A stretch of DNA of 64,000 nucleotides, from positions 545,724,001-545,788,000 of the forward strand of contig NC_091286.1 of the NCBI RefSeq assembly GCF_032444005.1, in the 5' to 3' direction. A program made the position numbers and the translations under genes. A model generated the notes under the pieces. It was not told where the DNA came from, searched no databases, and was given only the letters and a program-made list of their open reading frames with translations. Source of the stretch: Ranitomeya imitator. Taxonomy: Eukaryota. Of this stretch, positions 21,906-46,896 are shown in pieces. Position 1 is the first letter of the stretch; each line of letters begins with the position of its first letter.

Positions 21906-23196
21906 GCATGTCATGTGGAACATTATATGGTGACACCATGATCATGTGGGTTTAGTTTTACCTTGGACTATAGGTAAGCATTCTGAAAGGTTTTATATAG
22001 TTAGTACTAGAGTTGAGCGACCTTGACCTTTTTAGAGTCGAGCCGGGTTTCGCGAAACCCGACTATCTCAAAAGTCGGGTCGAGTGAAATCGGCCGATTA
22101 TGACGTAAAGTCGGGATCGACCGAAACACGAAACCCAATGCAATTCAATGGGGCAGCATAGTCGGCAGTAAGTGGGGGCCAGGAAAACACCTAGAGTGCC
22201 CATTTTAATGTCAAAACCATCCATTCTTCTTAATGAAGCTTGTCAAGCGTAATTTACCTTATAATAATTGGAAGGCATTTGAAATTGGGGGTCATTTGGC
22301 TAAAGTTGTGGTGGGTAAGGCTGGTTCAAGTAATTAGTGGGCCCAGGAAATCTGGACCACGTCACGGCAGTGGAGCAGGGAGAGGTAAGTATTTCAACTT
22401 TGCAAGTGCTGTGAACCTGAGCAAGCAGGGGGGGCCCACTCGTTGGCATTGGCACTGGCACAGGGCCCCTCAAAGTACAGCGGTGTGTTTGCACGGCGGG
22501 GGCGCCTCCCACCGGCAGCAACACTTTTGCGTACTATGAGAGGCCCTGTGCCAGTGACGTCGCCAACTAGTATTCCTCCCCCCACCTGATGAAGGAACCT
22601 GCACTTTCATCTGCACCTTCCTCTTTGTCCCCGTGTAAGGTGGTATGGTATGCGGGAAGAGCAACCTGACTTTCAGCAGGGTCACAATGTTGTTGTGTAG
22701 CGTGCACGGGGAATGTTGCGTTATGGGTCAATGTATCAGCAGACTCATCTATCACTGGCTGGGCAATGGGCAGGATGAGGAGGAAACACAGATATAGGCC
22801 CAAATAATAAAGTGGGCTAAATGCAGTTCAAAATTGGTAACACAGGAATAACCAGGGGGCATTGCAGTGGAGGACAACTGGAATGAGAGGCTGACACAGA
22901 GAGTAGGCCCAAATCAGTAAGTAGTCGAAATGCAGTTCAAAATTGGCAACCGTAGTAAACAGGCGGCACAGCTTTGTTCAGTGGAGGAGAACAGCAAGGA
23001 GTGGCAGACACCGATAGTAGGCCCCAACCCAACTAGTAGGCCAAATGCAGTCTAACATTAACAACTACTTAACGAGCGCCTGAAAACGGAATTTCAGGAC
23101 AGGAAACCAGGAGAACAGCAAGGAGCGGCAGACACTGTTAGTAGGCCCCAAACCAACTAGTACGCCAAATGCAGTTGTTCCATTTAACCACAATTT

Positions 23197-24040
23197 AACG
23201 AGAGCCTGAATATAGAAGCTCAGGAAAGGCAACCTGGAGAACACCTTGGAGTGGAACACACCATCTCTCTCCACCCCATACCCATTTTGTAGGCCTAATG
23301 CTGTGTAGTTTTCTACAACTACTAAACGAGAGTCGGAAGACCGAAGCAATGGCAAGGCAACCTGGGGAACACCTTGGAGTGTAACACACCATCTCTCTCC
23401 ACCCGATACCCATTTTGTAGGCCTAATGCAGTGTAGTTTTCTACAACTACTAAACGAGAGTCGGAAGATCGAAGCAATGGCGAGGAAACCTGGAGAACAC
23501 CTTGGAGTGTAACACACCATCTCTCTCCACCCCATACCCATTTTGTAGGCCTAATGCTGTGTAGTTTTCTACAACTACTAAACGAGAGTCGGAAGACCGA
23601 AGCAATGGCAAGGCAACCTGGGGAACACCTTGGAGTGTAACACACCATCTCTCTCCACCCCATACCCATTTTGTAGGCCTAATGCAGTGTAGTTTTCTAC
23701 AACTACTAAACGAGAGTCGGAAGACCGAAGCAATGGCAAGGCAACCTGGGGAACACCTTGGAGTGTAACACACCATCTCTCTCCACCCGATACCCATTTT
23801 GTAGGCCTAATGCAGTGTAGTTTTCTACAACTACTATACGAGAGTCGGAAGATCGAAGCAATGGCGAGGAAACCTGGAGAACACCTTGGAGTGTAACACA
23901 CCATCTCTCTCCACCCCATACCCATTTTGTAGGCCTAATGCAGCCTACTTTCCGACAACTACTAAACGAGAGCATGAAGATCGAAGCTCAGGAAAGGCAA
24001 CCTGGGGAACACCTTGGAGTGTAACACACCCTCTCTCTAC
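23197..24040. repeat. 128-bp tandem repeat (~6.5 copies), with degenerate ~125-bp units upstream from ~22790
   Basis: ACGAGAG recurs in units starting at 23197, 23325, 23453, 23581, 23709, 23837 and 23965. Confidence 0.95.
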
Positions 24041-24079
24041 ACCACGGAAGGGCTGATTCTTAGGAAGGAAGGCTGTCGG

Positions 24080-24156
24080 AAAGAAGCAGGGCGCGTCCGA
24101 GGGTGATTATATTCTTATTAGGTATATACTCACCCTCGGACGCGCCCTGCTTCTTT
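24080..24156. other. Perfect 27-bp-stem hairpin with 23-nt loop
   Basis: AAAGAAGCAGGGCGCGTCCGAGGGTGA (24080-24106) and its exact reverse complement (24130-24156). Confidence 0.9.
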
Positions 24157-24495
24157 ATTTGTAATGAATGTTTATTTGCAATGTGGTTTTGACTTACTCT
24201 ATTTTTTTGGTAAATAATGATTTTATTATTTTCATTGTTTTGCATCTTCTTGGCAATAATATAAAGAAGACGCGACAGGACAACACTCGGTGGATGCCAT
24301 ATCTGTGTTTTAAATTGAAAAAAACTTTCAGTTAACTACTTGCAGGAGAAAGTTATTGTAGCTGGTGGCCATTTTTAGTACTGTACCAGATTTTTGTTGT
24401 ATGTGTTTGTTTTTAATGTTAAAATGTCTGCATTTGATATCTCTCCAGTATTTTCTTTTTTATAAGCAAAATACTTATTTTTATATTTTCTGATG

Positions 24496-27400
24496 TTGGT
24501 TCAAGGGGTACACGGGCAGCAGTAGACAGGTCAGTGGAGGCCTAGTGGAAGGAGGGACCGCAGACAGGCTTCGAAGCCCTAACATAATAAATTGGGCTGG
24601 CTGTAGGCAATTTAAAATTGGTTCCAGGGGAACCCGGGCAGCAGTAGACAGGTCAGTGGAGGCCTAGTGGAAGGAGGGACCGCAGACAGGCTTCGAAGCC
24701 CTAACATAATAAATTGGGCTGGCTGTAGGCAATTTAAAATTGGTTCCAGGGGAACCCGGGCAGCAGTAGACAGGTCAGTGGAGGCCTAGTGGAAGGAGGG
24801 ACCGCAGACAGGCTCCGAAGCCCTAACATAATAAATTGGGCTGGCTGTAGGCAGTTTAAAATTGGTTCCAGGGGAACCCGGGCAGCAGTAGACAGGTCAG
24901 TGGAGGCCTAGTGGAAGGAGGGACCGCAGACAGGCTTCGAAGCCCTAACATAATAAATTGGGCTGGCTGTAGGCAATTTAAAATTGGTTCCAGGGGAACA
25001 CGGGCAGCAGTGGCCTGGTCAGTGTAGTAGTAGTGGAAAAACGGGCCGCAGACAGGCTTCGAAGGCCTAACATAACAAAAATTGGGATGTAGGCAATTTA
25101 CAATTGGTTCCAGGGGAACACGGGCAGCAGTAGACAGGTCAGTGGAGGCCTAGTGGAAGGAGGGACCGCAGACAGGCTTCGAAGCCCTAACATAATAAAT
25201 TGGCCTGGCTGTAGGCAATTTACAATTGGTTCCAGGGGAACACGGGCGGCAGTAGACAGGTCAGTGGAGGCCTAATGGAAGGAGGGACCGCAGACAGGCT
25301 TCGAAGCCCTAACATAATAAATTGGGCTGGCTGTAGGCAATTTAAAATTGGTTCCAGGGGAACCCGGGCAGCAGTAGACAGGTCAGTGGAGGCCTAGTGG
25401 AAGGAGGGACCGCAGACAGGCTTCGAAGCCCTAACATAATAAATTGGGCTGGCTGTAGGCAATTTAAAATTGGTTCCAGGGGAACCCGGGCAGCAGTAGA
25501 CAGGTCAGTGGAGGCCTAGTGGAAGGAGGGACCGCAGACAGGCTTCGAAGCCCTAACATAATAAATTGGCCTGGCTGTAGGCAATTTACAATTGGTTCCA
25601 GGGGAACACGGGCGGCAGTAGACAGGTCAGTGGAGGCCTAGTGGAAGGAGGGACCGCAGACAGGCTTCGAAGCCCTAACATACTAAATTGGGCTGGCTGT
25701 AGGCAATTTAAAATTGGTTCCAGGGGAACCCGGGCAGCAGTAGACAGGTCAGTGGAGGCCTAGTGGAAGGAGGGACCGCAGACAGGCTTCGAAGCCCTAA
25801 CATAATAAATTGGGCTGGCTGTAGGCAATTTAAAATTGGTTCCAGGGGAACACGGGCAGCAGTGGCCTGGTCAGTGTAGTAGTAGTGGAAAAACGGGCCG
25901 CAGACAGGCTTCGAAGGCCTAACATAACAAAAATTGGGATGTAGGCAATTTACAATTGGTTCCAGGGGAACCCGGGCAGCAGTAGACAGGTCAGTGGAGG
26001 CCTAGTGGAAGGAGGGACCGCAGACAGGCTTCGAAGCCCTAACATAATAAATTGGGCTGGCTGTAGGCAATTTAAAATTGGTTCCAGGGGAACCCGGGCA
26101 GCAGTAGACAGGTCAGTGGAGGCCTAGTGGAAGGAGGGACCGCAGACAGGCTTCGAAGCCCTAACATAATAAATTGGGCTGGCTGTAGGCAATTTAAAAT
26201 TGGTTCCAGGGGAACCCGGGCAGCAGTAGACAGGTCAGTGGAGGCCTAGTGGAAGGAGGGACCGCAGACAGGCTTCGAAGCCCTAACATAATAAATTGGG
26301 CTGGCTGTAGGCAATTTAAAATTGGTTCCAGGGGAACCCGGGCAGCAGTAGACAGGTCAGTGGAGGCCTAGTGGAAGGAGGGACCGAAAACAGGCTTCGA
26401 AGCCCTAACATAATAAATTGGCCTGGCTGTAGGCAATTTACAATTGGTTCCAGGGGAACACGGGCGGCAGTAGACAGGTCAGTGGAGGCCTAGTGGAAGG
26501 AGGGACCGCAGACAGGCTTCGAAGCCCTAACATAATAAATTGGGCTGGCTGTAGGCAATTTAAAATTGGTTCCAGGGGAACCCGGGCAGCAGTAGACAGG
26601 TCAGTGGAGGCCTAGTGGAAGGAGGGACCGCAGACAGGCTTCGAAGCCCTAACATAATAAATTGGGCTGGCTGTAGGCAATTTAAAATTGGTTCCAGGGG
26701 AACCCGGGCAGCAGTAGACAGGTCAGTGGAGGCCTAGTGGAAGGAGGGACCGCAGACAGGCTTCGAAGCCCTAACATAATAAATTGGCCTGGCTGTAGGC
26801 AATTTACAATTGGTTCCAGGGGAACACGGGCGGCAGTAGACAGGTCAGTGGAGGCCTAGTGGAAGGAGGGACCGCAGACAGGCTTCGAAGCCCTAACATA
26901 ATAAATTGGGCTGGCTGTAGGCAATTTAAAATTGGTTCCAGGGGAACCCGGGCAGCAGTAGACAGATCAGTGGAGGCCTAGTGGAAGGAGGGACCGCAGA
27001 CAGGCTTCGAAGCCCTAACATAATAAATTGGGCTGGCTGTAGGCAATTTAAAATTGGTTCCAGGGGAACACGGGCAGCAGTGGCCTGGTCAGTGTAGTAG
27101 TAGTGGAAAAACGGGCCGCAGACAGGCTTCGAAGGCCTAACATAACAAAAATTGGGATGTAGGCAATTTACAATTGGTTCCAGGGGAACACGGGCAGCAG
27201 TAGACAGGTCAGTGGAGGCCTAGTGGAAGGAGGGACTGCAGACAGGCTTCGAAGCCCTAACATAATAAATTGGGCTGGCTGTAGGTAATTTAAAATTGGT
27301 TCCAGGGGAACCCGGGCAGCAGTAGACAGGTCAGTGGAGGCCTAGTGGAAGGAGGGACCGCAGACAGGCTTCAAAGCCCTAACATAATAAATTGGGCTGG

Positions 27401-30400
27401 CTGTAGGCAATTTAAAATTGGTTCCAGGGGAACCCGGGCAGCAGTAGACAGGTCAGTGGAGGCCTAGTAGAAGGAGGGACCGCAGACAGGCTTCGAAGCC
27501 CTAACATAATAAATTGGCCTGGCTGTAGGCAATTTACAATTGGTTCCAGGGGAACACGGGCGGCAGTAGACAGGTCAGTGGAGGCCTAGTGGAAGGAGGG
27601 ACCGCAGACAGGCTTCGAAGCCCTAACATAATAAATTGGGCTGGCTGTAGGCAATTTAAAATTGGTTCCAGGGGAACCCGGGCAGCAGTAGACAGGTCAG
27701 TGGAGGCCTAGTGGAAGGAGGGACCGCAGACAGGCTTCGAAGCCCTAACATAATAAATTGGGCTGGCTGTAGGCAATTTAAAATTGGTTCCAGGGGAACC
27801 CGGGCAGCAGTAGACAGGTCAGTGGAGGCCTAGTGGAAGGAGGGACCGCAGACAGGCTTCGAAGCCCTAACATAATAAATTGGGCTGGCTGTAGGCAATT
27901 TAAAATTGGTTCCAGGGGAACCCGGGCAGCAGTAGACAGGTCAGTGGAGGCCTAGTAGAAGGAGGGACCGCAGACAGGCTTCGAAGCCCTAACATAATAA
28001 ATTGGCCTGGCTGTAGGCAATTTACAATTGGTTCCAGGGGAACACGGGCGGCAGTAGACAGGTCAGTGGAGGCCTAGTGGAAGGAGGGACCGCAGACAGG
28101 CTTCAAAGCCCTAACATAATAAATTGGGCTGGCTGTAGGCATTTTAAAATTGGTTCCAGGGGAACCCGGGCAGCAGTAGACAGGTCAGTGGAGGCCTAGT
28201 GGAAGGAGGGACCGCAGACAGGCTTCGAAGCCCTAACATAATAAATTGGCCTGGCTGTAGGCAATTTACAATTGGTTCCAGGGGAACACGGGCGGCAGTA
28301 GACAGGTCAGTGGAGGCCTAGTGGAAGGAGGGACCTCAGACAGGCTTCGAAGCCCTAACATAATAAATTGGGCTGGCTGTAGGCAATTTAAAATTGGTTC
28401 CAGGGGAACCCGGGCAGCAGTAGACAGGTCAGTGGAGGCCTAGTGGAAGGAGGGACCGCAGACAGGCTTCGAAGCCCTAACATAATAAATTGGGCTAGCT
28501 GTAGGCAATTTAAAATTGGTTCCAGGGGAACACGGGCAGCAGTGGCCTGGTCAGTGTAGTAGTAGTGGAAAAACGGGCCGCAGACAGGCTTCGAAGGCCT
28601 AACATAACAAAAATTGGGATGTAGGCAATTTACAATTGGTTCCAGGGGAACACGGGCAGCAGTAGACAGGTCAGTGGAGGCCTAGTGGAAGGAGGGACCG
28701 CAGACAGGCTTCGAAGCCCTAACATAATAAATTGGGCTGGCTGTAGGTAATTTAAAATTGGTTCCAGGGGAACCCGGGCAGCAGTAGACAGGTCAGTGGA
28801 GGCCTAGTGGAAGGAGGGACCGCAGACAGGCTTCGAAGCCCTAACATAATAAATTGGGCTGGCTGTAGGTAATTTAAAATTGGTTCCAGGGGAACCCGGG
28901 CAGCAGTAGACAGGTCAGTGGAGGCCTAGTGGAAGGAGGGACCGCAGACAGGCTTCAAAGCCCTAACATAATAAATTGGGCTGGCTGTAGGCAATTTAAA
29001 ATTGGTTCCAGGGGAACCCGGGCAGCAGTAGACAGGTCAGTGGAGGCCTAGTAGAAGGAGGGACCGCAGACAGGCTTCGAAGCCCTAACATAATAAATTG
29101 GCCTGGCTGTAGGCAATTTACAATTGGTTCCAGGGGAACACGGGCGGCAGTAGACAGGTCAGTGGAGGCCTAGTGGAAGGAGGGACCGCAGACAGGCTTC
29201 GAAGCCCTAACATAATAAATTGGGCTGGCTGTAGGCAATTTAAAATTGGTTCCAGGGGAACCCGGGCAGCAGTAGACAGGTCAGTGGAGGCCTAGTGGAA
29301 GGAGGGACCGCAGACAGGCTTCGAAGCCCTAACATAATAAATTGGGCTGGCTGTAGGCAATTTAAAATTGGTTCCAGGGGAACCCGGGCAGCAGTAGACA
29401 GGTCAGTGGAGGCCTAGTGGAAGGAGGGACCGCAGACAGGCTTCGAAGCCCTAACATAATAAATTGGGCTGGCTGTAGGCAATTTAAAATTGGTTCCAGG
29501 GGAACCCGGGCAGCAGTAGACAGGTCAGTGGAGGCCTAGTAGAAGGAGGGACCGCAGACAGGCTTCGAAGCCCTAACATAATAAATTGGCCTGGCTGTAG
29601 GCAATTTACAATTGGTTCCAGGGGAACACGGGCGGCAGTAGACAGGTCAGTGGAGGCCTAGTGGAAGGAGGGACCGCAGACAGGCTTCAAAGCCCTAACA
29701 TAATAAATTGGGCTGGCTGTAGGCATTTTAAAATTGGTTCCAGGGGAACCCGGGCAGCAGTAGACAGGTCAGTGGAGGCCTAGTGGAAGGAGGGACCGCA
29801 GACAGGCTTCGAAGCCCTAACATAATAAATTGGCCTGGCTGTAGGCAATTTACAATTGGTTCCAGGGGAACACGGGCGGCAGTAGACAGGTCAGTGGAGG
29901 CCTAGTGGAAGGAGGGACCGCAGACAGGCTTCGAAGCCCTAACATAATAAATTGGGCTGGCTGTAGGCAATTTAAAATTGGTTCCAGGGGAACCCGGGCA
30001 GCAGTAGACAGGTCAGTGGAGGCCTAGTGGAAGGAGGGACCGCAGACAGGCTTCGAAGCCCTAACATAATAAATTGGGCTAGCTGTAGGCAATTTAAAAT
30101 TGGTTCCAGGGGAACACGGGCAGCAGTGGCCTGGTCAGTGTAGTAGTAGTGGAAAAACGGGCCGCAGACAGGCTTCGAAGGCCTAACATAACAAAAATTG
30201 GGATGTAGGCAATTTACAATTGGTTCCAGGGGAACACGGGCAGCAGTAGACAGGTCAGTGGAGGCCTAGTGGAAGGAGGGACCGCAGACAGGCTTCGAAG
30301 CCCTAACATAATAAATTGGGCTGGCTGTAGGTAATTTAAAATTGGTTCCAGGGGAACCCGGGCAGCAGTAGACAGGTCAGTGGAGGCCTAGTGGAAGGAG

Positions 30401-33400
30401 GGACCGCAGACAGGCTTCAAAGCCCTAACATAATAAATTGGGCTGGCTGTAGGCAATTTAAAATTGGTTCCAGGGGAACCCGGGCAGCAGTAGACAGGTC
30501 AGTGGAGGCCTAGTAGAAGGAGGGACCGCAGACAGGCTTCGAAGCCCTAACATAATAAATTGGCCTGGCTGTAGGCAATTTACAATTGGTTCCAGGGGAA
30601 CACGGGCGGCAGTAGACAGGTCAGTGGAGGCCTAGTGGAAGGAGGGACCGCAGACAGGCTTCGAAGCCCTAACATAATAAATTGGGCTGGCTGTAGGCAA
30701 TTTAAAATTGGTTCCAGGGGAACCCGGGCAGCAGTAGACAGGTCAGTGGAGGCCTAGTGGAAGGAGGGACCGCAGACAGGCTTCGAAGCCCTAACATAAT
30801 AAATTGGGCTGGCTGTAGGCAATTTAAAATTGGTTCCAGGGGAACCCGGGCAGCAGTAGACAGGTCAGTGGAGGCCTAGTGGAAGGAGGGACCGCAGACA
30901 GGCTTCGAAGCCCTAACATAATAAATTGGGCTGGCTGTAGGCAATTTAAAATTGGTTCCAGGGGAACCCGGGCAGCAGTAGACAGGTCAGTGGAGGCCTA
31001 GTAGAAGGAGGGACCGCAGACAGGCTTCGAAGCCCTAACATAATAAATTGGCCTGGCTGTAGGCAATTTACAATTGGTTCCAGGGGAACACGGGCGGCAG
31101 TAGACAGGTCAGTGGAGGCCTAGTGGAAGGAGGGACCGCAGACAGGCTTCGAAGCCCTAACATAATAAATTGGGCTGGCTGTAGGCAATTTAAAATTGGT
31201 TCCAGGGGAACCCGGGCAGCAGTAGACAGGTCAGTGGAGGCCTAGTGGAAGGAGGGACCGCAGACAGGCTTCGAAGCCCTAACATAATAAATTGGGCTGG
31301 CTGTAGGCAATTTAAAATTGGTTCCAGGGGAACCCGGGCAGCAGTAGACAGGTCAGTGGAGGCCTAGTGGAAGGAGGGACCGCAGACAGGCTTCGAAGCC
31401 CTAACATAATAAATTGGCCTGGCTGTAGGCAATTTACAATTGGTTCCAGGGGAACACGGGCGGCAGTAGACAGGTCAGTGGAGGCCTAGTGGAAGGAGGG
31501 ACCGCAGACAGGCTTCGAAGCCCTAACATAATAAATTGGGCTGGCTGTAGGCAATTTAAAATTGGTTCCAGGGGAACCCGGGCAGCAGTAGACAGGTCAG
31601 TGGAGGCCTAGTGGAAGGAGGGACCGCAGACAGGCTTCGAAGCCCTAACATAATAAATTGGGCTGGCTGTAGGCAATTTAAAATTGGTTCCAGGGGAACA
31701 CGGGCAGCAGTGGCCTGGTCAGTGTAGTAGTAGTGGAAAAACGGGCCGCAGACAGGCTTCGAAGGCCTAACATAACAAAAATTGGGATGTAGGCAATTTA
31801 CAATTGGTTCCAGGGGAACACGGGCAGCAGTAGACAGGTCAGTGGAGGCCTAGTGGAAGGAGGGACCGCAGACAGGCTTCGAAGCCCTAACATAATAAAT
31901 TGGGCTGACTGTAGGTAATTTAAAATTGGTTCCAGGGGAACCCGGGCAGCAGTAGACAGGTCAGTGGAGGCCTAGTGGAAGGAGGGACCGCAGACAGGCT
32001 TCAAAGCCCTAACATAATAAATTGGGCTGGCTGTAGGCAATTTAAAATTGGTTCCAGGGGAACCCGGGCAGCAGTAGACAGGTCAGTGGAGGCCTAGTAG
32101 AAGGAGGGACCGCAGACAGGCTTCGAAGCCCTAACATAATAAATTGGCCTGGCTGTAGGCAATTTACAATTGGTTCCAGGGGAACACGGGCGGCAGTAGA
32201 CAGGTCAGTGGAGGCCTAGTGGAAGGAGGGACCGCAGACAGGCTTCGAAGCCCTAACATAATAAATTGGGCTGGCTGTAGGCAATTTAAAATTGGTTCCA
32301 GGGGAACCCGGGCAGCAGTAGACAGGTCAGTGGAGGCCTAGTGGAAGGAGGGACCGCAGACAGGCTTCGAAGCCCTAACATAATAAATTGGGCTGGCTGT
32401 AGGCAATTTAAAATTGGTTCCAGGGGAACCCGGGCAGCAGTAGACAGGTCAGTGGAGGCCTAGTGGAAGGAGGGACCGCAGACAGGCTTCGAAGCCCTAA
32501 CATAATAAATTGGGCTGGCTGTAGGCAATTTAAAATTGGTTCCAGGGGAACCCCGGCAGCAGTAGACAGGTCAGTGGAGGCCTAGTGGAAGGAGGGACCG
32601 AAAACAGGCTTCGAAGCCCTAACATAATAAATTGGCCTGGCTGTAGGCAATTTACAATTGGTTCCAGGGGAACACGGGCGGCAGTAGACAGGTCAGTGGA
32701 GGCCTAGTGGAAGGAGGGACCGCAGACAGGCTTCGAAGCCCTAACATAATAAATTGGGCTGGCTGTAGGCAATTTAAAATTGGTTCCAGGGGAACCCGGG
32801 CAGCAGTAGACAGGTCAGTGGAGGCCTAGTGGAAGGAGGGACCGCAGACAGGCTTCGAAGCCCTAACATAATAAATTGGGCTGGCTGTAGGCAATTTAAA
32901 ATTGGTTCCAGGGGAACCCGGGCAGCAGTAGACAGGTCAGTGGAGGCCTAGTGGAAGGAGGGACCGCAGACAGGCTTCGAAGCCCTAACATAATAAATTG
33001 GCCTGGCTGTAGGCAATTTACAATTTGTTCCAGGGAAACACGGGCGGCAGTAGACAGGTCAGTGGAGGCCTAGTGGAAGGAGGGACCGCAGACAGGCTTC
33101 GAAGCCCTAACATAATAAATTGGGCTGGCTGTAGGCAATTTAAAATTGGTTCCAGGGGAACCCGGGCAGCAGTAGACAGGTCAGTGGAGGCCTAGTGGAA
33201 GGAGGGACCGCAGACAGGCTTCGAAGCCCTAACATAATAAATTGGGCTAGCTGTAGGCAATTTAAAATTGGTTCCAGGGGAACACGGGCAGCAGTGGCCT
33301 GGTCAGTGTAGTAGTAGTGGAAAAACGGGCCGCAGACAGGCTTCGAAGGCCTAACATAACAAAAATTGGGATGTAGGCAATTTACAATTGGTTCCAGGGG

Positions 33401-36400
33401 AACACGGGCAGCAGTAGACAGGTCAGTGGAGGCCTAGTGGAAGGAGGGACCGCAGACAGGCTTCGAAGCCCTAACATAATAAATTGGGCTGGCTGTAGGT
33501 AATTTAAAATTGGTTCCAGGGGAACCCGGGCAGCAGTAGACAGGTCAGTGGAGGCCTAGTGGAAGGAGGGACCGCAGACAGGCTTCAAAGCCCTAACATA
33601 ATAAATTGGGCTGGCTGTAGGCAATTTAAAATTGGTTCCAGGGGAACCCGGGCAGCAGTAGACAGGTCAGTGGAGGCCTAGTAGAAGGAGGGACCGCAGA
33701 CAGGCTTCGAAGCCCTAACATAATAAATTGGCCTGGCTGTAGGCAATTTACAATTGGTTCCAGGGGAACACGGGCGGCAGTAGACAGGTCAGTGGAGGCC
33801 TAGTGGAAGGAGGGACCGCAGACAGGCTTCGAAGCCCTAACATATTAAATTGGGCTGGCTGTAGGCAATTTAAAATTGGTTCCAGGGGAACCCGGGCAGC
33901 AGTAGACAGGTCAGTGGAGGCCTAGTGGAAGGAGGGACCGCAGACAGGCTTCGAAGCCCTAACATAATAAATTGGGCTGGCTGTAGGCAATTTAAAATTG
34001 GTTCCAGGGGAACCCGGGCAGCAGTAGACAGGTCAGTGGAGGCCTAGTGGAAGGAGGGACCGCAGACAGGCTTCGAAGCCCTAACATAATAAATTGGGCT
34101 GGCTGTAGGCAATTTAAAATTGGTTCCAGGGGAACCCGGGCAGCAGTAGACAGGTCAGTGGAGGCCTAGTAGAAGGAGGGACCGCAGACAGGCTTCGAAG
34201 CCCTAACATAATAAATTGGCCTGGCTGTAGGCAATTTACAATTGGTTCCAGGGGAACACGGGCGGCAGTAGACAGGTCAGTGGAGGCCTAGTGGAAGGAG
34301 GGACCGCAGACAGGCTTCAAAGCCCTAACATAATAAATTGGGCTGGCTGTAGGCATTTTAAAATTGGTTCCAGGGGAACCCGGGCAGCAGTAGACAGGTC
34401 AGTGGAGGCCTAGTGGAAGGAGGGACCGCAGACAGGCTTCGAAGCCCTAACATAATAAATTGGCCTGGCTGTAGGCAATTTACAATTGGTTCCAGGGGAA
34501 CACGGGCGGCAGTAGACAGGTCAGTGGAGGCCTAGTGGAAGGAGGGACCGCAGACAGGCTTCGAAGCCCTAACATAATAAATTGGGCTGGCTGTAGGCAA
34601 TTTAAAATTGGTTCCAGGGGAACCCGGGCAGCAGTAGACAGGTCAGTGGAGGCCTAGTGGAAGGAGGGACCGCAGACAGGCTTCGAAGCCCTAACATAAT
34701 AAATTGGGCTAGCTGTAGGCAATTTAAAATTGGTTCCAGGGGAACACGGGCAGCAGTGGCCTGGTCAGTGTAGTAGTAGTGGAAAAACGGGCCGCAGACA
34801 GGCTTCGAAGGCCTAACATAACAAAAATTGGGATGTAGGCAATTTACAATTGGTTCCAGGGGAACACGGGCAGCAGTAGACAGGTCAGTGGAGGCCTAGT
34901 GGAAGGAGGGACCGCAGACAGGCTTCGAAGCCCTAACATAATAAATTGGGCTGGCTGTAGGTAATTTAAAATTGGTTCCAGGGGAACCCGGGCAGCAGTA
35001 GACAGGTCAGTGGAGGCCTAGTGGAAGGAGGGACCGCAGACAGGCTTCAAAGCCCTAACATAATAAATTGGGCTGGCTGTAGGCAATTTAAAATTGGTTC
35101 CAGGGGAACCCGGGCAGCAGTAGACAGGTCAGTGGAGGCCTAGTGGAAGGAGGGACCGCAGACAGGCTTCGAAGCCCTAACATAATAAATTGGGCTGGCT
35201 GTAGGCAATTTAAAATTGGTTCCAGGGGAACCCGGGCAGCAGTAGACAGGTCAGTGGAGGCCTAGTGGAAGGAGGGACCGCAGACAGGCTTCGAAGCCCT
35301 AACATAATAAATTGGGCTGGCTGTAGGTAATTTAAAATTGGTTCCAGGGGAACCCGGGCAGCAGTAGACAGGTCAGTGGAGGCCTAGTGGAAGGAGGGAC
35401 CGCAGACAGGCTTCAAAGCCCTAACATAATAAATTGGGCTGGCTGTAGGCAATTTAAAATTGGTTCCAGGGGAACCCGGGCAGCAGTAGACAGGTCAGTG
35501 GAGGCCTAGTAGAAGGAGGGACCGCAGACAGGCTTCGAAGCCCTAACATAATAAATTGGCCTGGCTGTAGGCAATTTACAATTGGTTCCAGGGGAACACG
35601 GGCGGCAGTAGACAGGTCAGTGGAGGCCTAGTGGAAGGAGGGACCGCAGACAGGCTTCGAAGCCCTAACATAATAAATTGGGCTGGCTGTAGGCAATTTA
35701 AAATTGGTTCCAGGGGAACCCGGGCAGCAGTAGACAGGTCAGTGGAGGCCTAGTGGAAGGAGGGACCGCAGACAGGCTTCGAAGCCCTAACATAATAAAT
35801 TGGGCTGGCTGTAGGCAATTTAAAATTGGTTCCAGGGGAACCCGGGCAGCAGTAGACAGGTCAGTGGAGGCCTAGTGGAAGGAGGGACCGCAGACAGGCT
35901 TCGAAGCCCTAACATAATAAATTGGGCTGGCTGTAGGCAATTTAAAATTGGTTCCAGGGGAACCCGGGCAGCAGTAGACAGGTCAGTGGAGGCCTAGTAG
36001 AAGGAGGGACCGCAGACAGGCTTCGAAGCCCTAACATAATAAATTGGCCTGGCTGTAGGCAATTTACAATTGGTTCCAGGGGAACACGGGCGGCAGTAGA
36101 CAGGTCAGTGGAGGCCTAGTGGAAGGAGGGACCGCAGACAGGCTTCAAAGCCCTAACATAATAAATTGGGCTGGCTGTAGGCATTTTAAAATTGGTTCCA
36201 GGGGAACCCGGGCAGCAGTAGACAGGTCAGTGGAGGCCTAGTGGAAGGAGGGACCGCAGACAGGCTTCGAAGCCCTAACATAATAAATTGGCCTGGCTGT
36301 AGGCAATTTACAATTGGTTCCAGGGGAACACGGGCGGCAGTAGACAGGTCAGTGGAGGCCTAGTGGAAGGAGGGACCGCAGACAGGCTTCGAAGCCCTAA

Positions 36401-39400
36401 CATAATAAATTGGGCTGGCTGTAGGCAATTTAAAATTGGTTCCAGGGGAACCCGGGCAGCAGTAGACAGGTCAGTGGAGGCCTAGTGGAAGGAGGGACCG
36501 CAGACAGGCTTCGAAGCCCTAACATAATAAATTGGGCTAGCTGTAGGCAATTTAAAATTGGTTCCAGGGGAACACGGGCAGCAGTGGCCTGGTCAGTGTA
36601 GTAGTAGTGGAAAAACGGGCCGCAGACAGGCTTCGAAGGCCTAACATAACAAAAATTGGGATGTAGGCAATTTACAATTGGTTCCAGGGGAACACGGGCA
36701 GCAGTAGACAGGTCAGTGGAGGCCTAGTGGAAGGAGGGACCGCAGACAGGCTTCGAAGCCCTAACATAATAAATTGGGCTGGCTGTAGGTAATTTAAAAT
36801 TGGTTCCAGGGGAACCCGGGCAGCAGTAGACAGGTCAGTGGAGGCCTAGTGGAAGGAGGGACCGCAGACAGGCTTCAAAGCCCTAACATAATAAATTGGG
36901 CTGGCTGTAGGCAATTTAAAATTGGTTCCAGGGGAACCCGGGCAGCAGTAGACAGGTCAGTGGAGGCCTAGTAGAAGGAGGGACCGCAGACAGGCTTCGA
37001 AGCCCTAACATAATAAATTGGCCTGGCTGTAGGCAATTTACAATTGGTTCCAGGGGAACACGGGCGGCAGTAGACAGGTCAGTGGAGGCCTAGTGGAAGG
37101 AGGGACCGCAGACAGGCTTCGAAGCCCTAACATAATAAATTGGGCTGGCTGTAGGCAATTTAAAATTGGTTCCAGGGGAACCCGGGCAGCAGTAGACAGG
37201 TCAGTGGAGGCCTAGTGGAAGGAGGGACCGCAGACAGGCTTCGAAGCCCTAACATAATAAATTGGGCTGGCTGTAGGCAATTTAAAATTGGTTCCAGGGG
37301 AACCCGGGCAGCAGTAGACAGGTCAGTGGAGGCCTAGTGGAAGGAGGGACCGCAGACAGGCTTCGAAGCCCTAACATAATAAATTGGGCTGGCTGTAGGC
37401 AATTTAAAATTGGTTCCAGGGGAACCCGGGCAGCAGTAGACAGGTCAGTGGAGGCCTAGTAGAAGGAGGGACCGCAGACAGGCTTCGAAGCCCTAACATA
37501 ATAAATTGGCCTGGCTGTAGGCAATTTACAATTGGTTCCAGGGGAACACGGGCGGCAGTAGACAGGTCAGTGGAGGCCTAGTGGAAGGAGGGACCGCAGA
37601 CAGGCTTCGAAGCCCTAACATAATAAATTGGGCTGGCTGTAGGCAATTTAAAATTGGTTCCAGGGGAACCCGGGCAGCAGTAGACAGGTCAGTGGAGGCC
37701 TAGTGGAAGGAGGGACCGCAGACAGGCTTCGAAGCCCTAACATAATAAATTGGGCTGGCTGTAGGCAATTTAAAATTGGTTCCAGGGGAACCCGGGCAGC
37801 AGTAGACAGGTCAGTGGAGGCCTAGTGGAAGGAGGGACCGCAGACAGGCTTCGAAGCCCTAACATAATAAATTGGCCTGGCTGTAGGCAATTTACAATTG
37901 GTTCCAGGGGAACACGGGCGGCAGTAGACAGGTCAGTGGAGGCCTAGTGGAAGGAGGGACCGCAGACAGGCTTCGAAGCCCTAACATAATAAATTGGGCT
38001 GGCTGTAGGCAATTTAAAATTGGTTCCAGGGGAACCCGGGCAGCAGTAGACAGGTCAGTGGAGGCCTAGTGGAAGGAGGGACCGCAGACAGGCTTCGAAG
38101 CCCTAACATAATAAATTGGGCTGGCTGTAGGCAATTTAAAATTGGTTCCAGGGGAACACGGGCAGCAGTGGCCTGGTCAGTGTAGTAGTAGTGGAAAAAC
38201 GGGCCGCAGACAGGCTTCGAAGGCCTAACATAACAAAAATTGGGATGTAGGCAATTTACAATTGGTTCCAGGGGAACACGGGCAGCAGTAGACAGGTCAG
38301 TGGAGGCCTAGTGGAAGGAGGGACCGCAGACAGGCTTCGAAGCCCTAACATAATAAATTGGGCTGACTGTAGGTAATTTAAAATTGGTTCCAGGGGAACC
38401 CGGGCAGCAGTAGACAGGTCAGTGGAGGCCTAGTGGAAGGAGGGACCGCAGACAGGCTTCAAAGCCCTAACATAATAAATTGGGCTGGCTGTAGGCAATT
38501 TAAAATTGGTTCCAGGGGAACCCGGGCAGCAGTAGACAGGTCAGTGGAGGCCTAGTAGAAGGAGGGACCGCAGACAGGCTTCGAAGCCCTAACATAATAA
38601 ATTGGCCTGGCTGTAGGCAATTTACAATTGGTTCCAGGGGAACACGGGCGGCAGTAGACAGGTCAGTGGAGGCCTAGTGGAAGGAGGGACCGCAGACAGG
38701 CTTCGAAGCCCTAACATAATAAATTGGGCTGGCTGTAGGCAATTTAAAATTGGTTCCAGGGGAACCCGGGCAGCAGTAGACAGGTCAGTGGAGGCCTAGT
38801 GGAAGGAGGGACCGCAGACAGGCTTCGAAGCCCTAACATAATAAATTGGGCTGGCTGTAGGCAATTTAAAATTGGTTCCAGGGGAACCCGGGCAGCAGTA
38901 GACAGGTCAGTGGAGGCCTAGTGGAAGGAGGGACCGCAGACAGGCTTCGAAGCCCTAACATAATAAATTGGGCTGGCTGTAGGCAATTTAAAATTGGTTC
39001 CAGGGGAACCCGGGCAGCAGTAGACAGGTCAGTGGAGGCCTAGTAGAAGGAGGGACCGCAGACAGGCTTCGAAGCCCTAACATAATAAATTGGCCTGGCT
39101 GTAGGCAATTTACAATTGGTTCCAGGGGAACACGGGCGGCAGTAGACAGGTCAGTGGAGGCCTAGTGGAAGGAGGGACCGCAGACAGGCTTCGAAGCCCT
39201 AACATAATAAATTGGGCTGGCTGTAGGCAATTTAAAATTGGTTCCAGGGGAACCAGGGCAGCAGTAGACAGGTCAGTGGAGGCCTAGTGGAAGGAGGGAC
39301 CGCAGACAGGCTTCGAAGCCCTAACATAATAAATTGGGCTGGCTGTAGGCAATTTAAAATTGGTTCCAGGGGAACCCGGGCAGCAGTAGACAGGTCAGTG

Positions 39401-40789
39401 GAGGCCTAGTGGAAGGAGGGACCGCAGACAGGCTTCGAAGCCCTAACATAATAAATTGGCCTGGCTGAAGGCAATTTACAATTGGTTCCAGGGGAACACG
39501 GGCGGCAGTAGACAGGTCAGTGGAGGCCTAGTGGAAGGAGGGACCGCAGACAGGCTTCGAAGCCCTAACATAATAAATTGGGCTGGCTGTAGGCAATTTA
39601 AAATTGGTTCCAGGGGAACCCGGGCAGCAGTAGACAGGTCAGTGGAGGCCTAGTGGAAGGAGGGACCGCAGACAGGCTTCGAAGCCCTAACATAATAAAT
39701 TGGGCTGGCTGTAGGCAATTTAAAATTGGTTCCAGGGGAACACGGGCAGCAGTGGCCTGGTCAGTGTAGTAGTAGTGGAAAAACGGGCCGCAGACAGGCT
39801 TCGAAGGCCTAACATAACAAAAATTGGGATGTAGGCAATTTACAGTTGGTTCCAGGGGAACACGGGCAGCAGTAGACAGGTCAGTGGAGGCCTAGTGGAA
39901 GGAGGGACCGCAGACAGGCTTCGAAGCCCTAACATAATAAATTGGCCTGGCTGTAGGCAATTTACAATTGGTTCCAGGGGAACACGGGCGGCAGTAGACA
40001 GGTCAGTGGAGGCCTAGTGGAAGGAGGGACCGCAGACAGGCTTCGAAGCCCTAACATAATAAATTGGGCTGGCTGTAGGCAATTTAAAATTGGTTCCAGG
40101 GGAACCCGGGCAGCAGTAGACAGGTCAGTGGAGGCCTAGTGGAAGGAGGGTCCGCAAACAGGCTTCGAAGCCCTAACATAATAAATTGGGCTGGCTGTAG
40201 GCAATTTAAAATTGGTTCCAGGGGAACACGGGCGGCAGTAGACAGGTCAGTGGAGGCCTAGTGGAAGGAAGGACCGCAGACAGGCTTCAAAGCCCTAACA
40301 TAATAAATTGGGCTGGCTGTAGGCATTTTAAAATTGGTTCCAGGGGAACCCGGGCAGCAGTAGACAGGTCAGTGGAGGCCTAGTGGAAGGAGGGACCGCA
40401 GACAGGCTTCGAAGCCCTAACATAATAAATTGGGCTGGCTGTAGGCAATTTAAAATTGGCTCCAGGGGAACACGGGCAGCAGTGGCCTGGTCAGTGTAGT
40501 AGTAGTGGAAAAACGGGCCGCAGACAGGCTTCGAAGGCCTAACATAACAAAAATTGGGATGTAGGCAATTTACAATTGGTTCCAGGGGAACCTGGGCAGC
40601 AGTAGACAGGTCAGTGGAGGCCTAGTGGAAGGAGGGACCGCAGACAGGCTTCGAAGCCCTAACATAATAAATTGGGCTGGCTGTAGGCAATTTAAAATTG
40701 GTTCCAGGGGAACCCGGGCAGCAGTAGACAGGTCAGTGGAGGCCTAGTGGAAGGAGTGACCGCAGACAGGCTTCGAAGGCCTAACATAA
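24496..40789. repeat. 122-bp satellite array (~133 monomers) with higher-order repeat structure marked by a 120-bp variant monomer
   Basis: Period 122 (TCGAAG-equivalent positions at 24571, 24693, 24815); 12 variant monomers with spacings of n x 122 + 120. Confidence 0.97.
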
Positions 40790-41251
40790 GAAAAATGTCA
40801 ATACAATGGTATTGACAGTGCCAGGCATTGAAGGATGTCAGCGCATAGACTAAACATTGGTGGAGCTGTGAGAGAAAATTTTGCAAGTGGTAGAGCACTG
40901 TTTGACCTGGGGGGGGGGACTGTCTTGTGGCCGGCGGTACAGGCCCAGGGCCCCTCATATTACAACGGTGTGTCTGACGTTGGGTGCGCACCACCACCGC
41001 CAGACACTTTATTGTACTATGAGGGACCTAGTGGCAGTGCCGTCGACCAAAAGCGGGCACACCCACCTCTTCAGACAAACAGTACTCTCACGGGTGCTGG
41101 CGCCAAGTGGCGATACCACGGCCCCGTGTGGGGACTTTGGCCATCTAGGGAGGTGTTAACATGTCGGATGCTGGACAATCAGGTGCTGCAAATTACAAGA
41201 TTGGAAAAGTCGTTCAGAATAGTCCACAGGCAAGACCTTTACATAGGAAAG

Positions 41252-44200
41252 CTAGGTGTCAGCCGGGCAAGGTGGGGCAAAAGATTTCGAAATCCAGTTG
41301 TGGTTCATTTTAATGAAGGTTAGATCATCTACATTTTGGGTAGCCAGACGAGTCCTTTTTTCTGTTAGTATTGAACCTGCAGCACTGAATACTCTTTCTG
41401 ATAGGACACTAGCTGCCGGGCAAGCAAGCTCCTGCAATGCATATTCTGCCAATTCTGGCCAGGTGTCTAATTTTGATGCCCAGTAATCAAATGGGAATGA
41501 CGGTTGAGGGAGAACGTCGATAAGGGATGAAAAATAGTTAGTAACCATACTGGACAAATGTTGTCTCCTGTCACTTTGAATTGATGCTGCAGTACCTGTC
41601 CTGTCTGCGGTCATAGCAAAATCACTCCACAACCTGGTCAGAAAACCACTCTGGCTAACGACACTTCTGATTTCTGCCCCTCTAACACCTCTGGTCTGCT
41701 GGCCCCTGCAGCTCGTGTTAGAACGATCACGGGCGCTGTGTGCAGGGAATGCCAGAAGCAAACGGTCAACAAGAGTTGATTGTTTGGTTGCTAATATTAG
41801 TTCCAAGTTCTCATGTGGCATTATATTTTGCAATTTGCCTTTATAGCGAGGATCAAGGAGGCAGGCCAACCAGTAATCGTCATCGTTCATCATTTTTGTT
41901 ATGCGTGTGTCCCTTTTGAGGATACGTAAGGCATAATCCGCCATGTGGGCCAAAGTTCCAGTTCTCAAATCTGTGGTTGTGCTTGGTTGAGGGGCAGTTT
42001 CAGGCAAATCCACGTCACTTGTGTCCCTCCAAAAACCAGAACCCGGCCTTGCCGCGCCAACAATTTCCACTGGCCCCGGAAAAGCTTCCTCATTAAAAAT
42101 ATAATCATCCCCATCATCCTCCTCGTCCTCCTCCTCCTCTTCGCCCGCTACCTCGTCCTGTACACTGCCCTGGCCAGACAATGGCTGACTGTCATCAAGG
42201 CTTTCCTCTTCCTCAGCTGCAGACGCCTGATCCTTTATGTGCGTCAAACTTTGCATCAGCAGACGCATTAGGGGGATGCTCATGCTTATTATGGCGTTGT
42301 CTGCACTAACCAGCCGTGTGCATTCCTCAAAACACTGAAGGACTTGACACATGTCTTGAATCTTCGACCACTGCACACCTGACAACTCCATGTCTGCCAT
42401 CCTACTGCCTGCCCGTGTATGTGTATCCTCCCACAAAAACATAACAGCCCGCCTCTGTTCACACAGTCTCTGAAGCATGTGCAGTGTTGAGTTCCACCTT
42501 GTTGCAACGTCTATGATTAGGCGATGCTGGGGAAGGTTCAAAGAACGCTGATAGGTCTGCATACGGCTGGAGTGTACGGGCGAACGGCGGATATGTGAGC
42601 AAAGTCCACGCACTTTGAGGAGCAGGTCGGATAACCCCGGATAACTTTTCAGGAAGCACTGCACCACCAGGTTTAAGGTGTGAGCCAGGCAAGGAATGTG
42701 TTTCAGTTGGGAAATGGAGATGGCAGCCATGAAATTCCTTCCGTTATCACTCACTACCTTGCCTGCCTCAAGATCTACAGTGCCCAGCCACGACTGCGTT
42801 TCTTTCTGCAAGAACTCGGACAGAACTTCAGCGGTGTGTCTGTTGTCGCCCAAACACTTCATAGCCAATACAGCCTGCTGACGTTTGCCAGTAGCTGCCC
42901 CATAATGGGAGACCTGGTGTGCAACAGTGGCAGCTGCGGATGGAGTGGTTGTGCGACTGCGGTCTGTGGACGAGGTCTCGCTTCTGCAGGAGGAGGAGGA
43001 GGAGGGGGTGCGAATGGCTACAGCCAACTGTTTCCTAGACCGTGGGCTAGGCAGAACTGTCCCAAACTTGCTGTCCCCTGTGGACCCTGCATCCACCACA
43101 TTTACCCAGTGTGCCGTGATGGACACGTAACGTCCCTGGCCATGCCTACTGGTCCATGCATCTGTTGTCAGGTGCACCTTTGTGCTCACAGATTGCCTGA
43201 GTGCATGGACGATGCGCTCTTTAACATGCTGGTGGAGGGCTGGGATGGCTTTTCTGGAAAAAAAGTGTCGACTGGGTAGCTCGTAGCGTGGTACAGCGTA
43301 GTCCATCAGGGCTTTGAAAGCTTCGCTTTCAACTAACCGGTAGGGCATCATCTCTAACGAGATTAGTCTAGCTATGTGGGCGTTCAAACCCTGTGTACGC
43401 GGATGCGAGGCTAAGTACTTCCTTTTTCTAACCATAGTCTCATGTAGGGTGAGCTGGACTGGAGAGCTGGAGATCGTGGAACTAGCGGGGGTGCCGGTGG
43501 ACATGGCAGACTGAGAGACGGTGGGAGATGGTATTGTTGCCGCCGGTGCCCTAGATGCAGTGTTTCCTACTACGAAACTGGTGATTCCCTGACCCTGACT
43601 TCTTTGGCCTGGCAAAGAAACCTGCACAGATACTGCAGGTGGTGCAGAAAATGGTGGCCCTACACTGCCGGAAGGGATGTTGCGTTGATGACTAGCTTCA
43701 TTGGCCGAGGGTGCTACAACCTTAAGGGACGTTTGGTAGTTAGTCCAAGCTTGCAAATGCATGGTGGTTAAATGTCTATGCATGCAACTTGTATTGAGAC
43801 TTTTCAGATTCTGCCCTCTGCTTAAGGTAGTTGAACATTTTTTGACAGATGACTTTGCGCTGATCAATTGGATGTTGTTTAAAAAAATGCCAGACTGCAC
43901 TCTTTCTAGCATCGGATACCTTTTCAGGCATTGCAGACTGAGCTTTAACCGGATGGCCACGCTGTCCTCCAACAGGTTTTGACTTTGCCACGCGTTTTGG
44001 GCAAGATACGGGCCCGGCAGATGGAACCTGTTGCGATGTTGATGCCTGCTGCGGCCCCTCCTCCTCCGCTTCAGAACTGCTGCCGCCTGCACCCTGTTCC
44101 CCCAATGGCTGCCAATCGGGGTCAAGAACTGGGTCATCTATTACCTCTTCTTGTAGCTCGTGTGCAACTTCGTCTGTGTCACCTTGTCGGTCGGTGGTAT

Positions 44201-44816
44201 AGCGTTCGTGATGGGGCAACATAGTCTCATCAGGGTCTGATTCTTGATCAGCACCCTGCGAGGGCAATGTTGTGGTCTGAGTCAAAGGACCAGCATAGTA
44301 GTCTGGCTGTGGCTGTGCATCAGTGCACTCCATGTCAGATTCAACTTGTAATGGGCATGGACTGTTAACTGCTTCACTTTCTAAGCCAGGGACGGTATGT
44401 GTAAAGAGCTCCATGGAGTAACCCATTGTGTCGCCTGCTGCATTCTTCTCTGTTGTTGTTTTTGCTGAAGAGGACAAGGAAGCGACTTGTCCCTGACCGT
44501 GAACATCCACTAACGACGCGCTGCTTTTACTTTTACCAGTTTCACGAGAGGAGGCAAAAGAGCTAGAGGCTGAGTCAGCAAGATAAGCCAAAACTTGCTC
44601 TTGCTGCTCCGGCTTTAAAAGCGGTTTTCCTACTCCCAGAAAAGGGAGCGTTCGAGGCCTTGTGTAGCCAGACGACGAACCTGGCTCCACAGCTCCAGAC
44701 TTAGGTGCAATATTTTTTTTCCCACGACCACCTGATGCTCCACCACTACCACTACCCTCATTACCAGCTGACAATGAACGCCCCCGGCCACGACCTCTTC
44801 CACCAGACTTCCTCAT
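41252..44816 (-). pseudogene. BED-finger hAT transposase, ~1187 aa if the single +1 frameshift at 43838-43843 is corrected
   Basis: BED finger split across two ORFs (AVWHFF...VICQK | CSTTLS...MHRHLTTMH); catalytic motifs LTTDAWTS, VSDNGRN, CLAH, TRWNS, LLDPRYK, SERVFS; hAT dimerisation domain. Confidence 0.9.
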
Positions 44817-45019
44817 TGTTTTAAAAACGTTACCAAACTAACGGTATTTGTTGCAGTCACACAACTTACACGGTGAGCTATAACTTCAGTATGATTTAGC
44901 TACCCCTTTACAGGTGGGTGAGACCACAACGAAAATCAGGCACAATGTTACACACTCTGTTGTTGGTGGCAACAAATGAGAGAGATGCCACACACGCAGG
45001 ACTGTCACTGAAGCGCAAA

Positions 45020-46748: not shown

Positions 46749-46896
46749 AACATGGCGGTCGGCGGGAACTCCCCTTTATAGCCCCTGTGACGCCGCAGAC
46801 AGCAAGCCAATCACTGCAATGCCCTTCTCTAAGATGGTGGGGACCAGGACCTATGTCATCACGCTGCCCACACTCTGCGTTTACCTTCATTGGCTG
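46749..46896 (-). promoter_or_regulatory. Candidate hAT transposase promoter
   Basis: Minus-strand TATAAA at 46780-46775, CCAAT boxes near 46807 and 46891, YY1-like AACATGGCGG at 46749-46758; points from the right end toward the ORF. Confidence 0.5.

What the first reader, a model, noticed from the sequence alone, without database searches (positions are those of the whole stretch)
24496..40789. Alpha-satellite-like higher-order repeat (modal 13-mer, 1584 bp) in the transposon-borne array
Seen: a 120-bp variant monomer (GTGGCCTGGTCAGTGTAGTAGTAG...) at 25011, 25863, 27081, 28543, 30127, 31711, 33295, 34757, 36585, 38169, 39753 and 40483. Spacings of 852, 1218, 1462, 1584, 1584, 1584, 1462, 1828, 1584, 1584 and 730 all equal n x 122 + 120 (7, 10, 12, 13, 13, 13, 12, 15, 13, 13 and 6 monomers). 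Diagnostic variants (GTAGGTAATT, TTCAAAG, AGTAGAAGG) recur in similar order after most variant monomers. Each standard monomer holds a perfect 12-bp palindrome GGCTTCGAAGCC and the dyad CAATTT-A-AAATTG; the recurring TTCGAA>TTCAAA change fits CpG methylation. Inference: HOR organisation, typical of centromeric satellites, is arising inside a DNA transposon.
Basis: partly seen in the sequence, partly recalled or inferred. Interest (0 to 1): 0.75.

Follow-up and report, generated by a model that had tools for sequence, protein, structure and literature searches.

The report
Higher-order satellite inside frog hAT transposon
A 16-kb head-to-tail repeat inside a 25-kb jumping gene of a poison frog really is built in nested layers (122 bp, about 1.6 kb, about 6.3 kb), but this is what uneven recombination does to any young repeat array, and nothing links it to centromeres.

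Summary
Window 24496-40793 is 133 monomers plus a 96-bp stub: 121 of 122 bp and 12 of a 120-bp variant ("D", about 17% diverged). The D spacings are exactly those reported, with motif starts one base lower. Monomer order is non-random with or without D. Four 13-mer units differ by 0-9 of 1584 bases. Above them lies a 4-unit block duplication (6214 vs 6458 bp, 99.8% alike).

The array lies inside a hAT transposon at 22008-47055, with 13-bp inverted ends (12/13) and a perfect 8-bp target duplication GTTAGTAC. Its BED-hAT transposase is broken by one extra base at 43838.

The monomer is home-grown: degenerate relatives sit at 22795-23018 in the same element. The family is highly multi-copy in Ranitomeya. 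D-like monomers and the array's left junction occur in other species' runs.

Array edges carry 5 times more private substitutions than the centre. That fits a young transposon-borne satellite layered by unequal exchange.

"Alpha-satellite-like" is only an analogy. There is no CENP-B box and no centromere evidence, and apart from D the monomers are 97.8% alike. The CpG argument rests on at most 2 events. The dyads are intact in only 41 of 133 monomers.

The scan has already noted giant satellite-bearing hATs, and one HOR in a transposon, elsewhere in this genome.

The parts
22000..22007 (.). left copy of the 8-bp target-site duplication GTTAGTAC
   Evidence: read directly; identical to 47056-47063
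22008..47055 (-). whole hAT element, 25,048 bp (transposase on the minus strand)
   Evidence: 13-bp terminal inverted repeats TAGAGTTGAGCGA / TAGGGTTGAGCGA (12 of 13), subterminal AAAGTCG/CGAAACC motifs at both ends, perfect 8-bp TSD
22795..23175 (+). three or four degenerate 109-124-bp units related to the 122-bp monomer
   Evidence: local alignment of the monomer to 22795-22903 scores z=10.9 over shuffles (about 78% of aligned columns identical, nearly full length); 22904-23018 scores z=4.3; families D3/D4
23226..24043 (+). 128-bp x 6.4 array; no detectable similarity to the 122-mer
   Evidence: z=-0.5
24496..40793 (+). 122-bp satellite array, 133 monomers plus a 96-bp stub
24984..27053 (+). 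left-edge short units (7-mer, 10-mer) of older form, D followed by C/AG/plain triplets
   Evidence: more private substitutions
27054..33267 (+). block 1 of the super-repeat: HOR units H3-H6 (12, 13, 13, 13 monomers; 6214 bp)
33268..39725 (+). block 2 of the super-repeat: HOR units H7-H10 (12, 15, 13, 13 monomers; 6458 bp)
   Evidence: 12 substitutions and 2 monomer gaps against block 1; H5 and H9 identical over 1584 bp
39726..40793 (+). right-edge short units (6-mer, D + 1 + stub) resembling the left edge
41252..44816 (-). hAT transposase gene (BED finger, RNase-H-like core, hAT dimerisation domain) in two frames
   Evidence: Pfam Dimer_Tnp_hAT 1.5e-11; homologues carry PF02892, PF27039 and PF05699; both ORFs abut at residue 325/326 of Ranitomeya variabilis protein P0005
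43838..43838 (-). one extra base that splits the BED finger (CQK|C) and the reading frame
   Evidence: most contigs of four other runs lack one base here (table 4)
45024..46192 (+). 387-bp x 3.1 array on the 5' side of the transposase
47056..47063 (.). right copy of the target-site duplication GTTAGTAC

Best explanation
This is a young, non-coding satellite carried inside a hAT DNA transposon of a Ranitomeya poison frog. A roughly 110-125-bp unit native to the element's 3' region was amplified into a 122-bp array. Repeated out-of-register exchange then copied ever larger multi-monomer pieces. The mechanism could be unequal sister-chromatid crossing-over, replication slippage, or template slippage during gap repair. 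The resulting layers are C/AG/plain triplets, then units of 7 to 15 monomers headed by one diverged 120-bp monomer (modal 13-mer, 1584 bp), then a 4-unit block of about 6.3 kb. Turnover is concentrated in the middle, so the centre is nearly identical and the edges keep older, shorter, more mutated units. The HOR pattern is a by-product of array dynamics, not a sign of centromere function. Shown here: anatomy, statistics, transposon boundaries, family multiplicity. Inferred: the exchange mechanism and the timing relative to insertion.
For: Array and monomer typing. Periodicity beats shuffles with and without the D monomer. HOR copies differ by 0-9 of 1584 bases, and 10 of 12 D monomers are identical. 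The block duplication H3-H6 / H7-H10 is 99.8% alike, with shared rare substitutions at lag 51-53. Edges carry 0.41 private substitutions per monomer against 0.077 in the centre, p=2.4e-4. TIRs plus a perfect 8-bp TSD enclose the array, and the transposase is a hAT one. The monomer is homologous to degenerate units in the same element. There is no long ORF, no Rfam family and no unusual single-strand fold (z=-0.48). Thousands of contigs from organisms A, B and C lie on 4.8 kb of the element, including D-like monomers, and a contig of organism D carries the array's left junction. Only 20 singleton substitutions occur in 16.3 kb (0.12%), against at least 0.43% private differences in the element's non-array part. 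The literature establishes TE-borne arrays and HOR by co-amplification of adjacent monomers (PMC5615363, PMC9659126, PMC4079207).
Against: It is therefore not shown which layers arose before or after this insertion. Only contigs, not raw long reads, could be laid, so the assembly of the array is not independently checked. Three 6-bp-arm dyads per monomer exceed shuffles (p about 0.001), which leaves room for a sequence-specific role. The lag-3 triplet layer is visible by eye but not significant (z about -1.4).
Confidence: 0.8

Rival explanations
1. One reading: an emerging centromeric-type satellite. HOR organisation would mark a sequence on its way to, or already in, centromere or CENP-A chromatin, seeded by a transposon.
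For: HOR and a layered pattern of young centre and older edges resemble alpha-satellite arrays. The monomer family is abundant in several Ranitomeya runs. TE-derived centromeric satellites are known, for example SGM in Drosophila guanche (PMC9659126).
Against: The array is 16 kb, bounded by TIRs and a TSD, and sits in a TE-rich stretch with Gypsy, Tc1-like and Harbinger elements. There is no CENP-B-box core. Non-D monomers are 97.8% alike. The scan has noted 10-20-kb arrays of unrelated origin on other pieces of this genome, so array growth looks genome-wide rather than locus-specific. These are unchecked notes. No positional or chromatin data exist.
Confidence: 0.05
2. Assembly artefact: the periodic variant or the 6.3-kb block duplication was created by mis-assembly of a simpler array.
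For: Long, near-identical repeats are error-prone. H5 and H9 are identical over 1584 bp. No raw long reads could be laid.
Against: D occurs 12 times in several different contexts and unit lengths. The two blocks differ by 12 substitutions and 2 monomer insertions, which a false duplication would not produce. D-like monomers flanked by standard monomers occur in independent runs of three other organisms. The likely source runs hold 0.92-0.93 of the sampled words.
Confidence: 0.05
3. Functional binding-site array: the three dyads per monomer are sites for the element's BED-hAT transposase or a host factor, and the array is kept as a sponge or as silencer or heterochromatin bait.
For: Dyad content exceeds dinucleotide shuffles: score 18 against 0.7 +/- 2.4, p about 0.001.
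Against: The commonest variants hit the dyads (columns 17, 78, 113, 115 and 120). Only 80, 106 and 76 of 133 monomers keep each dyad, and 41 keep all three. The monomer shares only scattered 8-mers (one 10-bp run) with the subterminal regions and lacks their repeated AAAGTCG/CGAAACC motifs.
Confidence: 0.07

Closest known systems
Tandem-repeat-bearing DNA transposons that seed satellites (Tetris foldback element of Drosophila virilis, TR-MITEs of bivalves, Helentron CgHINE of oysters)
   Same: A tandem array native to the element sits between its ends and travels with it. The array is homogenised, and the element family is multi-copy (PMC4079207, PMC9659126, PMC5615363).
   Different: This is a hAT of autonomous type (transposase gene present, though frameshifted in this copy). 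The array is far longer (133 monomers, 16.3 kb, 65% of a 25-kb element) and shows three nested repeat levels. Arrays outside the element were not looked for.
Alpha-satellite higher-order repeats of primate centromeres
   Same: Multi-monomer units are repeated at 99.4-100% identity, the centre is young and the edges older, and unit length varies through monomer gain and loss.
   Different: The monomer is 122 bp, not 171 bp. Within-unit divergence is about 2% except for one monomer at 17%, whereas alpha-satellite monomers within a unit differ far more (my own knowledge). The scale is 16 kb, not megabases. There is no CENP-B box, and no evidence of centromeric position.
Other giant satellite-bearing hAT elements noted by this scan in the same genome (s1-280605, s1-271918, s1-294801, s1-295213)
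   Same: The architecture is shared: a hAT transposase flanked by home-grown arrays. One note reports an intact 1191-aa transposase, which matches the length this copy would have without its frameshift.
   Different: Those are AI notes on other DNA. I could not compare sequences, so membership of the same family is not shown.

Membership tests
hAT superfamily DNA transposon | 8-bp target-site duplication | tested here: met
   GTTAGTAC at 22000-22007 and 47056-47063, 8 of 8
hAT superfamily DNA transposon | short terminal inverted repeats | tested here: met
   13 bp, 12 of 13 complementary, at 22008 and 47055
hAT superfamily DNA transposon | transposase with BED finger, RNase-H-like core and C-terminal hAT dimerisation domain | tested here: met
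   PF05699 at 1.5e-11. Homologues at 74-97% identity carry PF02892 or PF27039, and more distant full-length ones (40-43%) carry PF02892, PF27039 and PF05699 together. The reading frame is broken once, at 43838.
Higher-order repeat (HOR) satellite organisation | multi-monomer unit repeated in tandem, with same-position monomers much more alike than different-position monomers | tested here: met
   Same position 1.09 differences against 5.40 for different positions per 122 bp. HOR copies differ by 0-9 of 1584 bases. Shuffle tests.
Higher-order repeat (HOR) satellite organisation | substantial divergence among the monomers of one unit | tested here: inconclusive
   Only the D monomer is diverged (about 20 of 122). 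The others are 97.8% alike.
Centromeric satellite (alpha-satellite-like) | location at the centromere / CENP-A chromatin | not testable with these tools
   No chromosome position, FISH or ChIP data.
Centromeric satellite (alpha-satellite-like) | CENP-B-box-type motif | tested here: not met
   The core TTCGNNNNANNCGGG has 0 matches in the window. A frog need not use this motif, so this weighs little.
Transposon-borne satellite (Tetris / TR-MITE type) | array lies between the element's ends and is shared by other copies of the family | tested here: met
   The array lies within the TIRs and TSD. A contig of organism D carries the same left junction, and the monomers are multi-copy in organisms A-D.
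Transposon-borne satellite (Tetris / TR-MITE type) | the same repeat also forms long arrays outside the element | not tested
   Whole-genome DNA of the frog assemblies was not available.

The most novel reading that the evidence does not exclude
A still-mobile vertebrate hAT family carries, reshapes and disperses a ready-made HOR satellite. Each excision and gap-repair cycle reshuffles the array. Dispersed copies act as seeds from which long heterochromatic, or even centromeric, satellites of poison frogs grow. This would help explain why 10-20-kb arrays are noted so often in this 6-7-Gb genome.
Probability: 0.1. Interest if true: 0.7.

Novelty: new member of a known kind. Interest (0 to 1): 0.35.

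Why it matters
The element is a closed system. The array's outer limits are fixed by the transposon ends and a dated insertion event. Comparing copies of the family within and between Ranitomeya species could therefore measure how fast a satellite builds higher-order structure, and whether transposition-linked repair drives it. It also warns against reading HOR as a centromere mark, and it adds to the picture of poison-frog genome growth by transposons that carry their own satellites. Conceptually it extends known transposon-to-satellite cases rather than revealing a new mechanism.

Tried and rejected
- The search of earlier findings by sequence and by HOR words gave nothing.
- An Rfam scan of 22000-26000 gave only sub-threshold miRNA-like hits on the 24080-24156 hairpin and nothing on the monomer.
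- The single-strand DNA fold of the monomer is not unusual.
- The 128-bp array is not detectably related to the 122-mer.
- A 3-monomer sub-period is visible in the type string but not significant at lag 3.
- Outgroup polarisation of D against the standard monomer was inconclusive.
- Depths from Logan contigs cannot be used as copy numbers, so no abundance estimate is given.
- Literature searches found no description of satellites in dendrobatid hAT elements. The library is partial, so this is weak evidence of novelty.
Full report
**1. Observation**

Tandem Repeats Finder reports a single array at 24496-40793 with period 122, 133.8 copies and 94% matches.

A sequential decomposition gives 133 monomers, 121 of 122 bp and 12 of 120 bp, plus a 96-bp stub.

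The 120-bp monomer ("D") differs from the consensus at about 20 of 122 columns. Ten of the twelve D copies are identical. The other monomers are 97.8% alike. They differ mainly at nine columns: 17, 23, 52, 78, 101, 104, 113, 115 and 120.

**2. Is the order more than chance?**

- Mean difference between monomers 13 apart is 3.16, against 5.62 for all pairs. The best lag in 2000 shuffles of monomer order never fell below 3.64.
- With D fixed and only the other monomers shuffled, the observed statistic is 1.0 against 1.98 +/- 0.12. The periodicity therefore does not rest on D alone.
- In the five 13-mers, same-position monomers differ by 1.09 bases and different-position monomers by 5.40.
- Units starting at monomers 47, 60, 100 and 113 differ by 0-9 of 1584 bases, and units 47 and 100 are identical.
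- A whole-array shift scan puts 1584 bp above 122 bp as the best self-match.

**3.

Units H3-H6 (27054-33267, 51 monomers) and H7-H10 (33268-39725, 53 monomers) are a block duplication. They differ by 12 substitutions and two inserted monomers, which is 99.8% identity. A rare substitution is shared at lag 53 (column 105 A in monomers 61 and 114) and another pair at lag 51 (66A and 68A in monomers 16 and 67).

Below the 12-13-mer, a C/AG/plain triplet recurs by eye but is not significant at lag 3.

Both edges hold shorter units of the same older form, D followed by triplets. They lack the column 113, 52 and 104 markers of the central units (the column 78 and 115 variants occur once, in monomer 130). 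Edge monomers carry 0.41 private substitutions each, against 0.077 in the centre (p=2.4e-4). Turnover is therefore central and recent, and the edges are relics.

**4. Context: the array is cargo of a hAT transposon**

The ends are TAGAGTTGAGCGA at 22008 and its near-perfect inverse ending at 47055. A perfect 8-bp duplication GTTAGTAC flanks them. Subterminal AAAGTCG/CGAAACC motifs occur at both ends. The element is 25,048 bp, and the 122-bp array is 65% of it.

On the minus strand, 44816-41252 encodes a hAT transposase with the Pfam hAT dimerisation domain. The closest proteins are Ranitomeya imitator and R. variabilis "ZBED-like" models at 74-97% identity, carrying zf-BED or the ZBED1 RNase-like domain. 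More distant full-length homologues (40-43%) carry both of these plus the hAT dimerisation domain. That also identifies the genus.

The gene is in two frames in this copy. Both ORFs abut at residues 325/326 of the R. variabilis protein P0005, inside the BED finger (CQK|C). Most contigs from four other runs lack one base at 43838. This copy therefore has a private 1-nt insertion and cannot make full-length transposase, unless that base is an assembly error.

**5. Origin of the monomer**

The monomer aligns over almost its whole length to a degenerate unit at 22795-22903 in the same element (z=10.9 against shuffles), and more weakly to the next unit (z=4.3). It does not align to the 128-bp array or to control stretches. 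The satellite is therefore home-grown from the element's own 3' region.

It has no ORF of 130 aa or more, no Rfam match and no unusual single-strand fold.

**6. Other genomes and individuals**

Only Logan contigs were available.

- Laid on 40212-45000, thousands of short contigs from organisms A, B and C fit at 90% or better, about half of them at 99% or better in organism A. The family is highly multi-copy and young.
- Loose ends in organisms B and C show D-like monomers with small differences.
- A contig of organism D carries the array's left-junction sequence next to a monomer start.

The element-plus-array architecture, and the D/standard dichotomy, therefore predate this copy.

At least 18 positions in the 4.2-kb non-array part differ from nearly all other contigs (at least 0.43%). 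The 16.3-kb array has only 20 singleton substitutions (0.12%), where 70 would be expected at 0.43%. This suggests that most of the array was generated or homogenised within this copy's own lineage. Those private differences could still be subfamily markers, so timing relative to insertion stays open.

**7.

- *Dyads.* The 12-bp palindrome and the 6-1-6 dyad are real, and there is a third dyad, GGTTCC-AGG-GGAACC. Together they exceed dinucleotide shuffles (p about 0.001). However, the commonest variants fall in them. They are intact in 106, 76 and 80 of 133 monomers, and all three are intact in 41. The monomer shares only scattered 8-mers (one 10-bp run) with the subterminal regions and lacks their repeated AAAGTCG/CGAAACC motifs. 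Nothing indicates selection on the dyads.
- *CpG.* TTCGAA>TTCAAA occupies only two HOR positions, so it is at most two events. Of 30 distinct changes, 3 are CpG transitions against 0.49 expected (p=0.014). That is ordinary CpG decay.
- *Centromere.* No CENP-B-box core occurs. Position and chromatin are untestable here.

**8. Mechanism**

The nested periods, the variable unit lengths (6-15 monomers), the near-identity of central copies and the mutated, shorter edge units are the expected signature of repeated out-of-register exchange in a tandem array. HORs arise by co-amplification of adjacent monomers (PMC5615363).

For a cut-and-paste element, an additional route is template slippage during repair of the excision gap from the sister copy. 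Gap repair after excision is described in PMC9659126. Its link to array change is my inference.

**9. Comparison and novelty**

Transposons carrying internal tandem repeats that seed satellites are well documented. Examples are Tetris (PMC4079207), and TR-MITEs and Helentrons (PMC9659126, PMC5615363).

I found no paper on such hAT elements in dendrobatid frogs. The scan itself has already noted several giant satellite-bearing hATs, and one "HOR inside a transposon", on other pieces of this genome, along with many unrelated 10-20-kb arrays. These are unchecked notes.

This is a clean, unusually large and well-layered example of a known kind. It is not a new kind, and it is not evidence for centromere biology.

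**10. Limits**

- No other full copy and no raw long reads could be examined.
- Contig depths are not copy numbers.
The N runs at 56355-56685 were left alone.

Noticed in passing
window 43838 (minus-strand transposase): This copy's transposase has one extra base inside the BED zinc finger. Most contigs of four other runs lack it, so the family consensus is open-reading but this 25-kb copy is not.
   Followed up: yes
window 22451-22566 and 40936-41050: A 115-bp unit that is itself a hairpin (51-nt arms) occurs twice in direct order inside the hAT at 78% identity. The two copies bracket all the left-hand arrays, which hints at an old internal segmental duplication.
   Followed up: partly
window 24080-24156: A near-perfect hairpin (38-nt arms, 92%) lies between the 128-bp and 122-bp arrays. 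It gives only sub-threshold miRNA-precursor-like Rfam hits.
   Followed up: partly
window 41004 to 44795 (run X4): One contig joins these two points, skipping 3790 bp that hold the transposase. This may indicate internally deleted non-autonomous relatives. Support is weak (20 nt on the shorter side).
   Followed up: no
window 7557-15971: Ty3/Gypsy gag-protease, RT-RNaseH and integrase-chromodomain pieces lie on the minus strand. They are split by a 3.9-kb block of three different arrays (140 bp, 63 bp, and 27 bp x 65) at 10358-13835.
   Followed up: no
window 19438-19632 / 20970-21162: A Tc1-like element with inverted ends of about 200 nt sits just left of the hAT. A 22-bp x 30 array at 21239-21906 abuts the hAT insertion site.
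   Followed up: no
window 45024-46192: A 387-bp x 3.1 array lies on the 5' side of the transposase, so arrays sit on both sides of the gene, as the scan noted for other hATs of this genome.
   Followed up: no
window 24496-40793: The + strand of the array is 62% purine (GC skew +0.25, AT skew +0.23). This is a strong strand asymmetry of unknown consequence.
   Followed up: no
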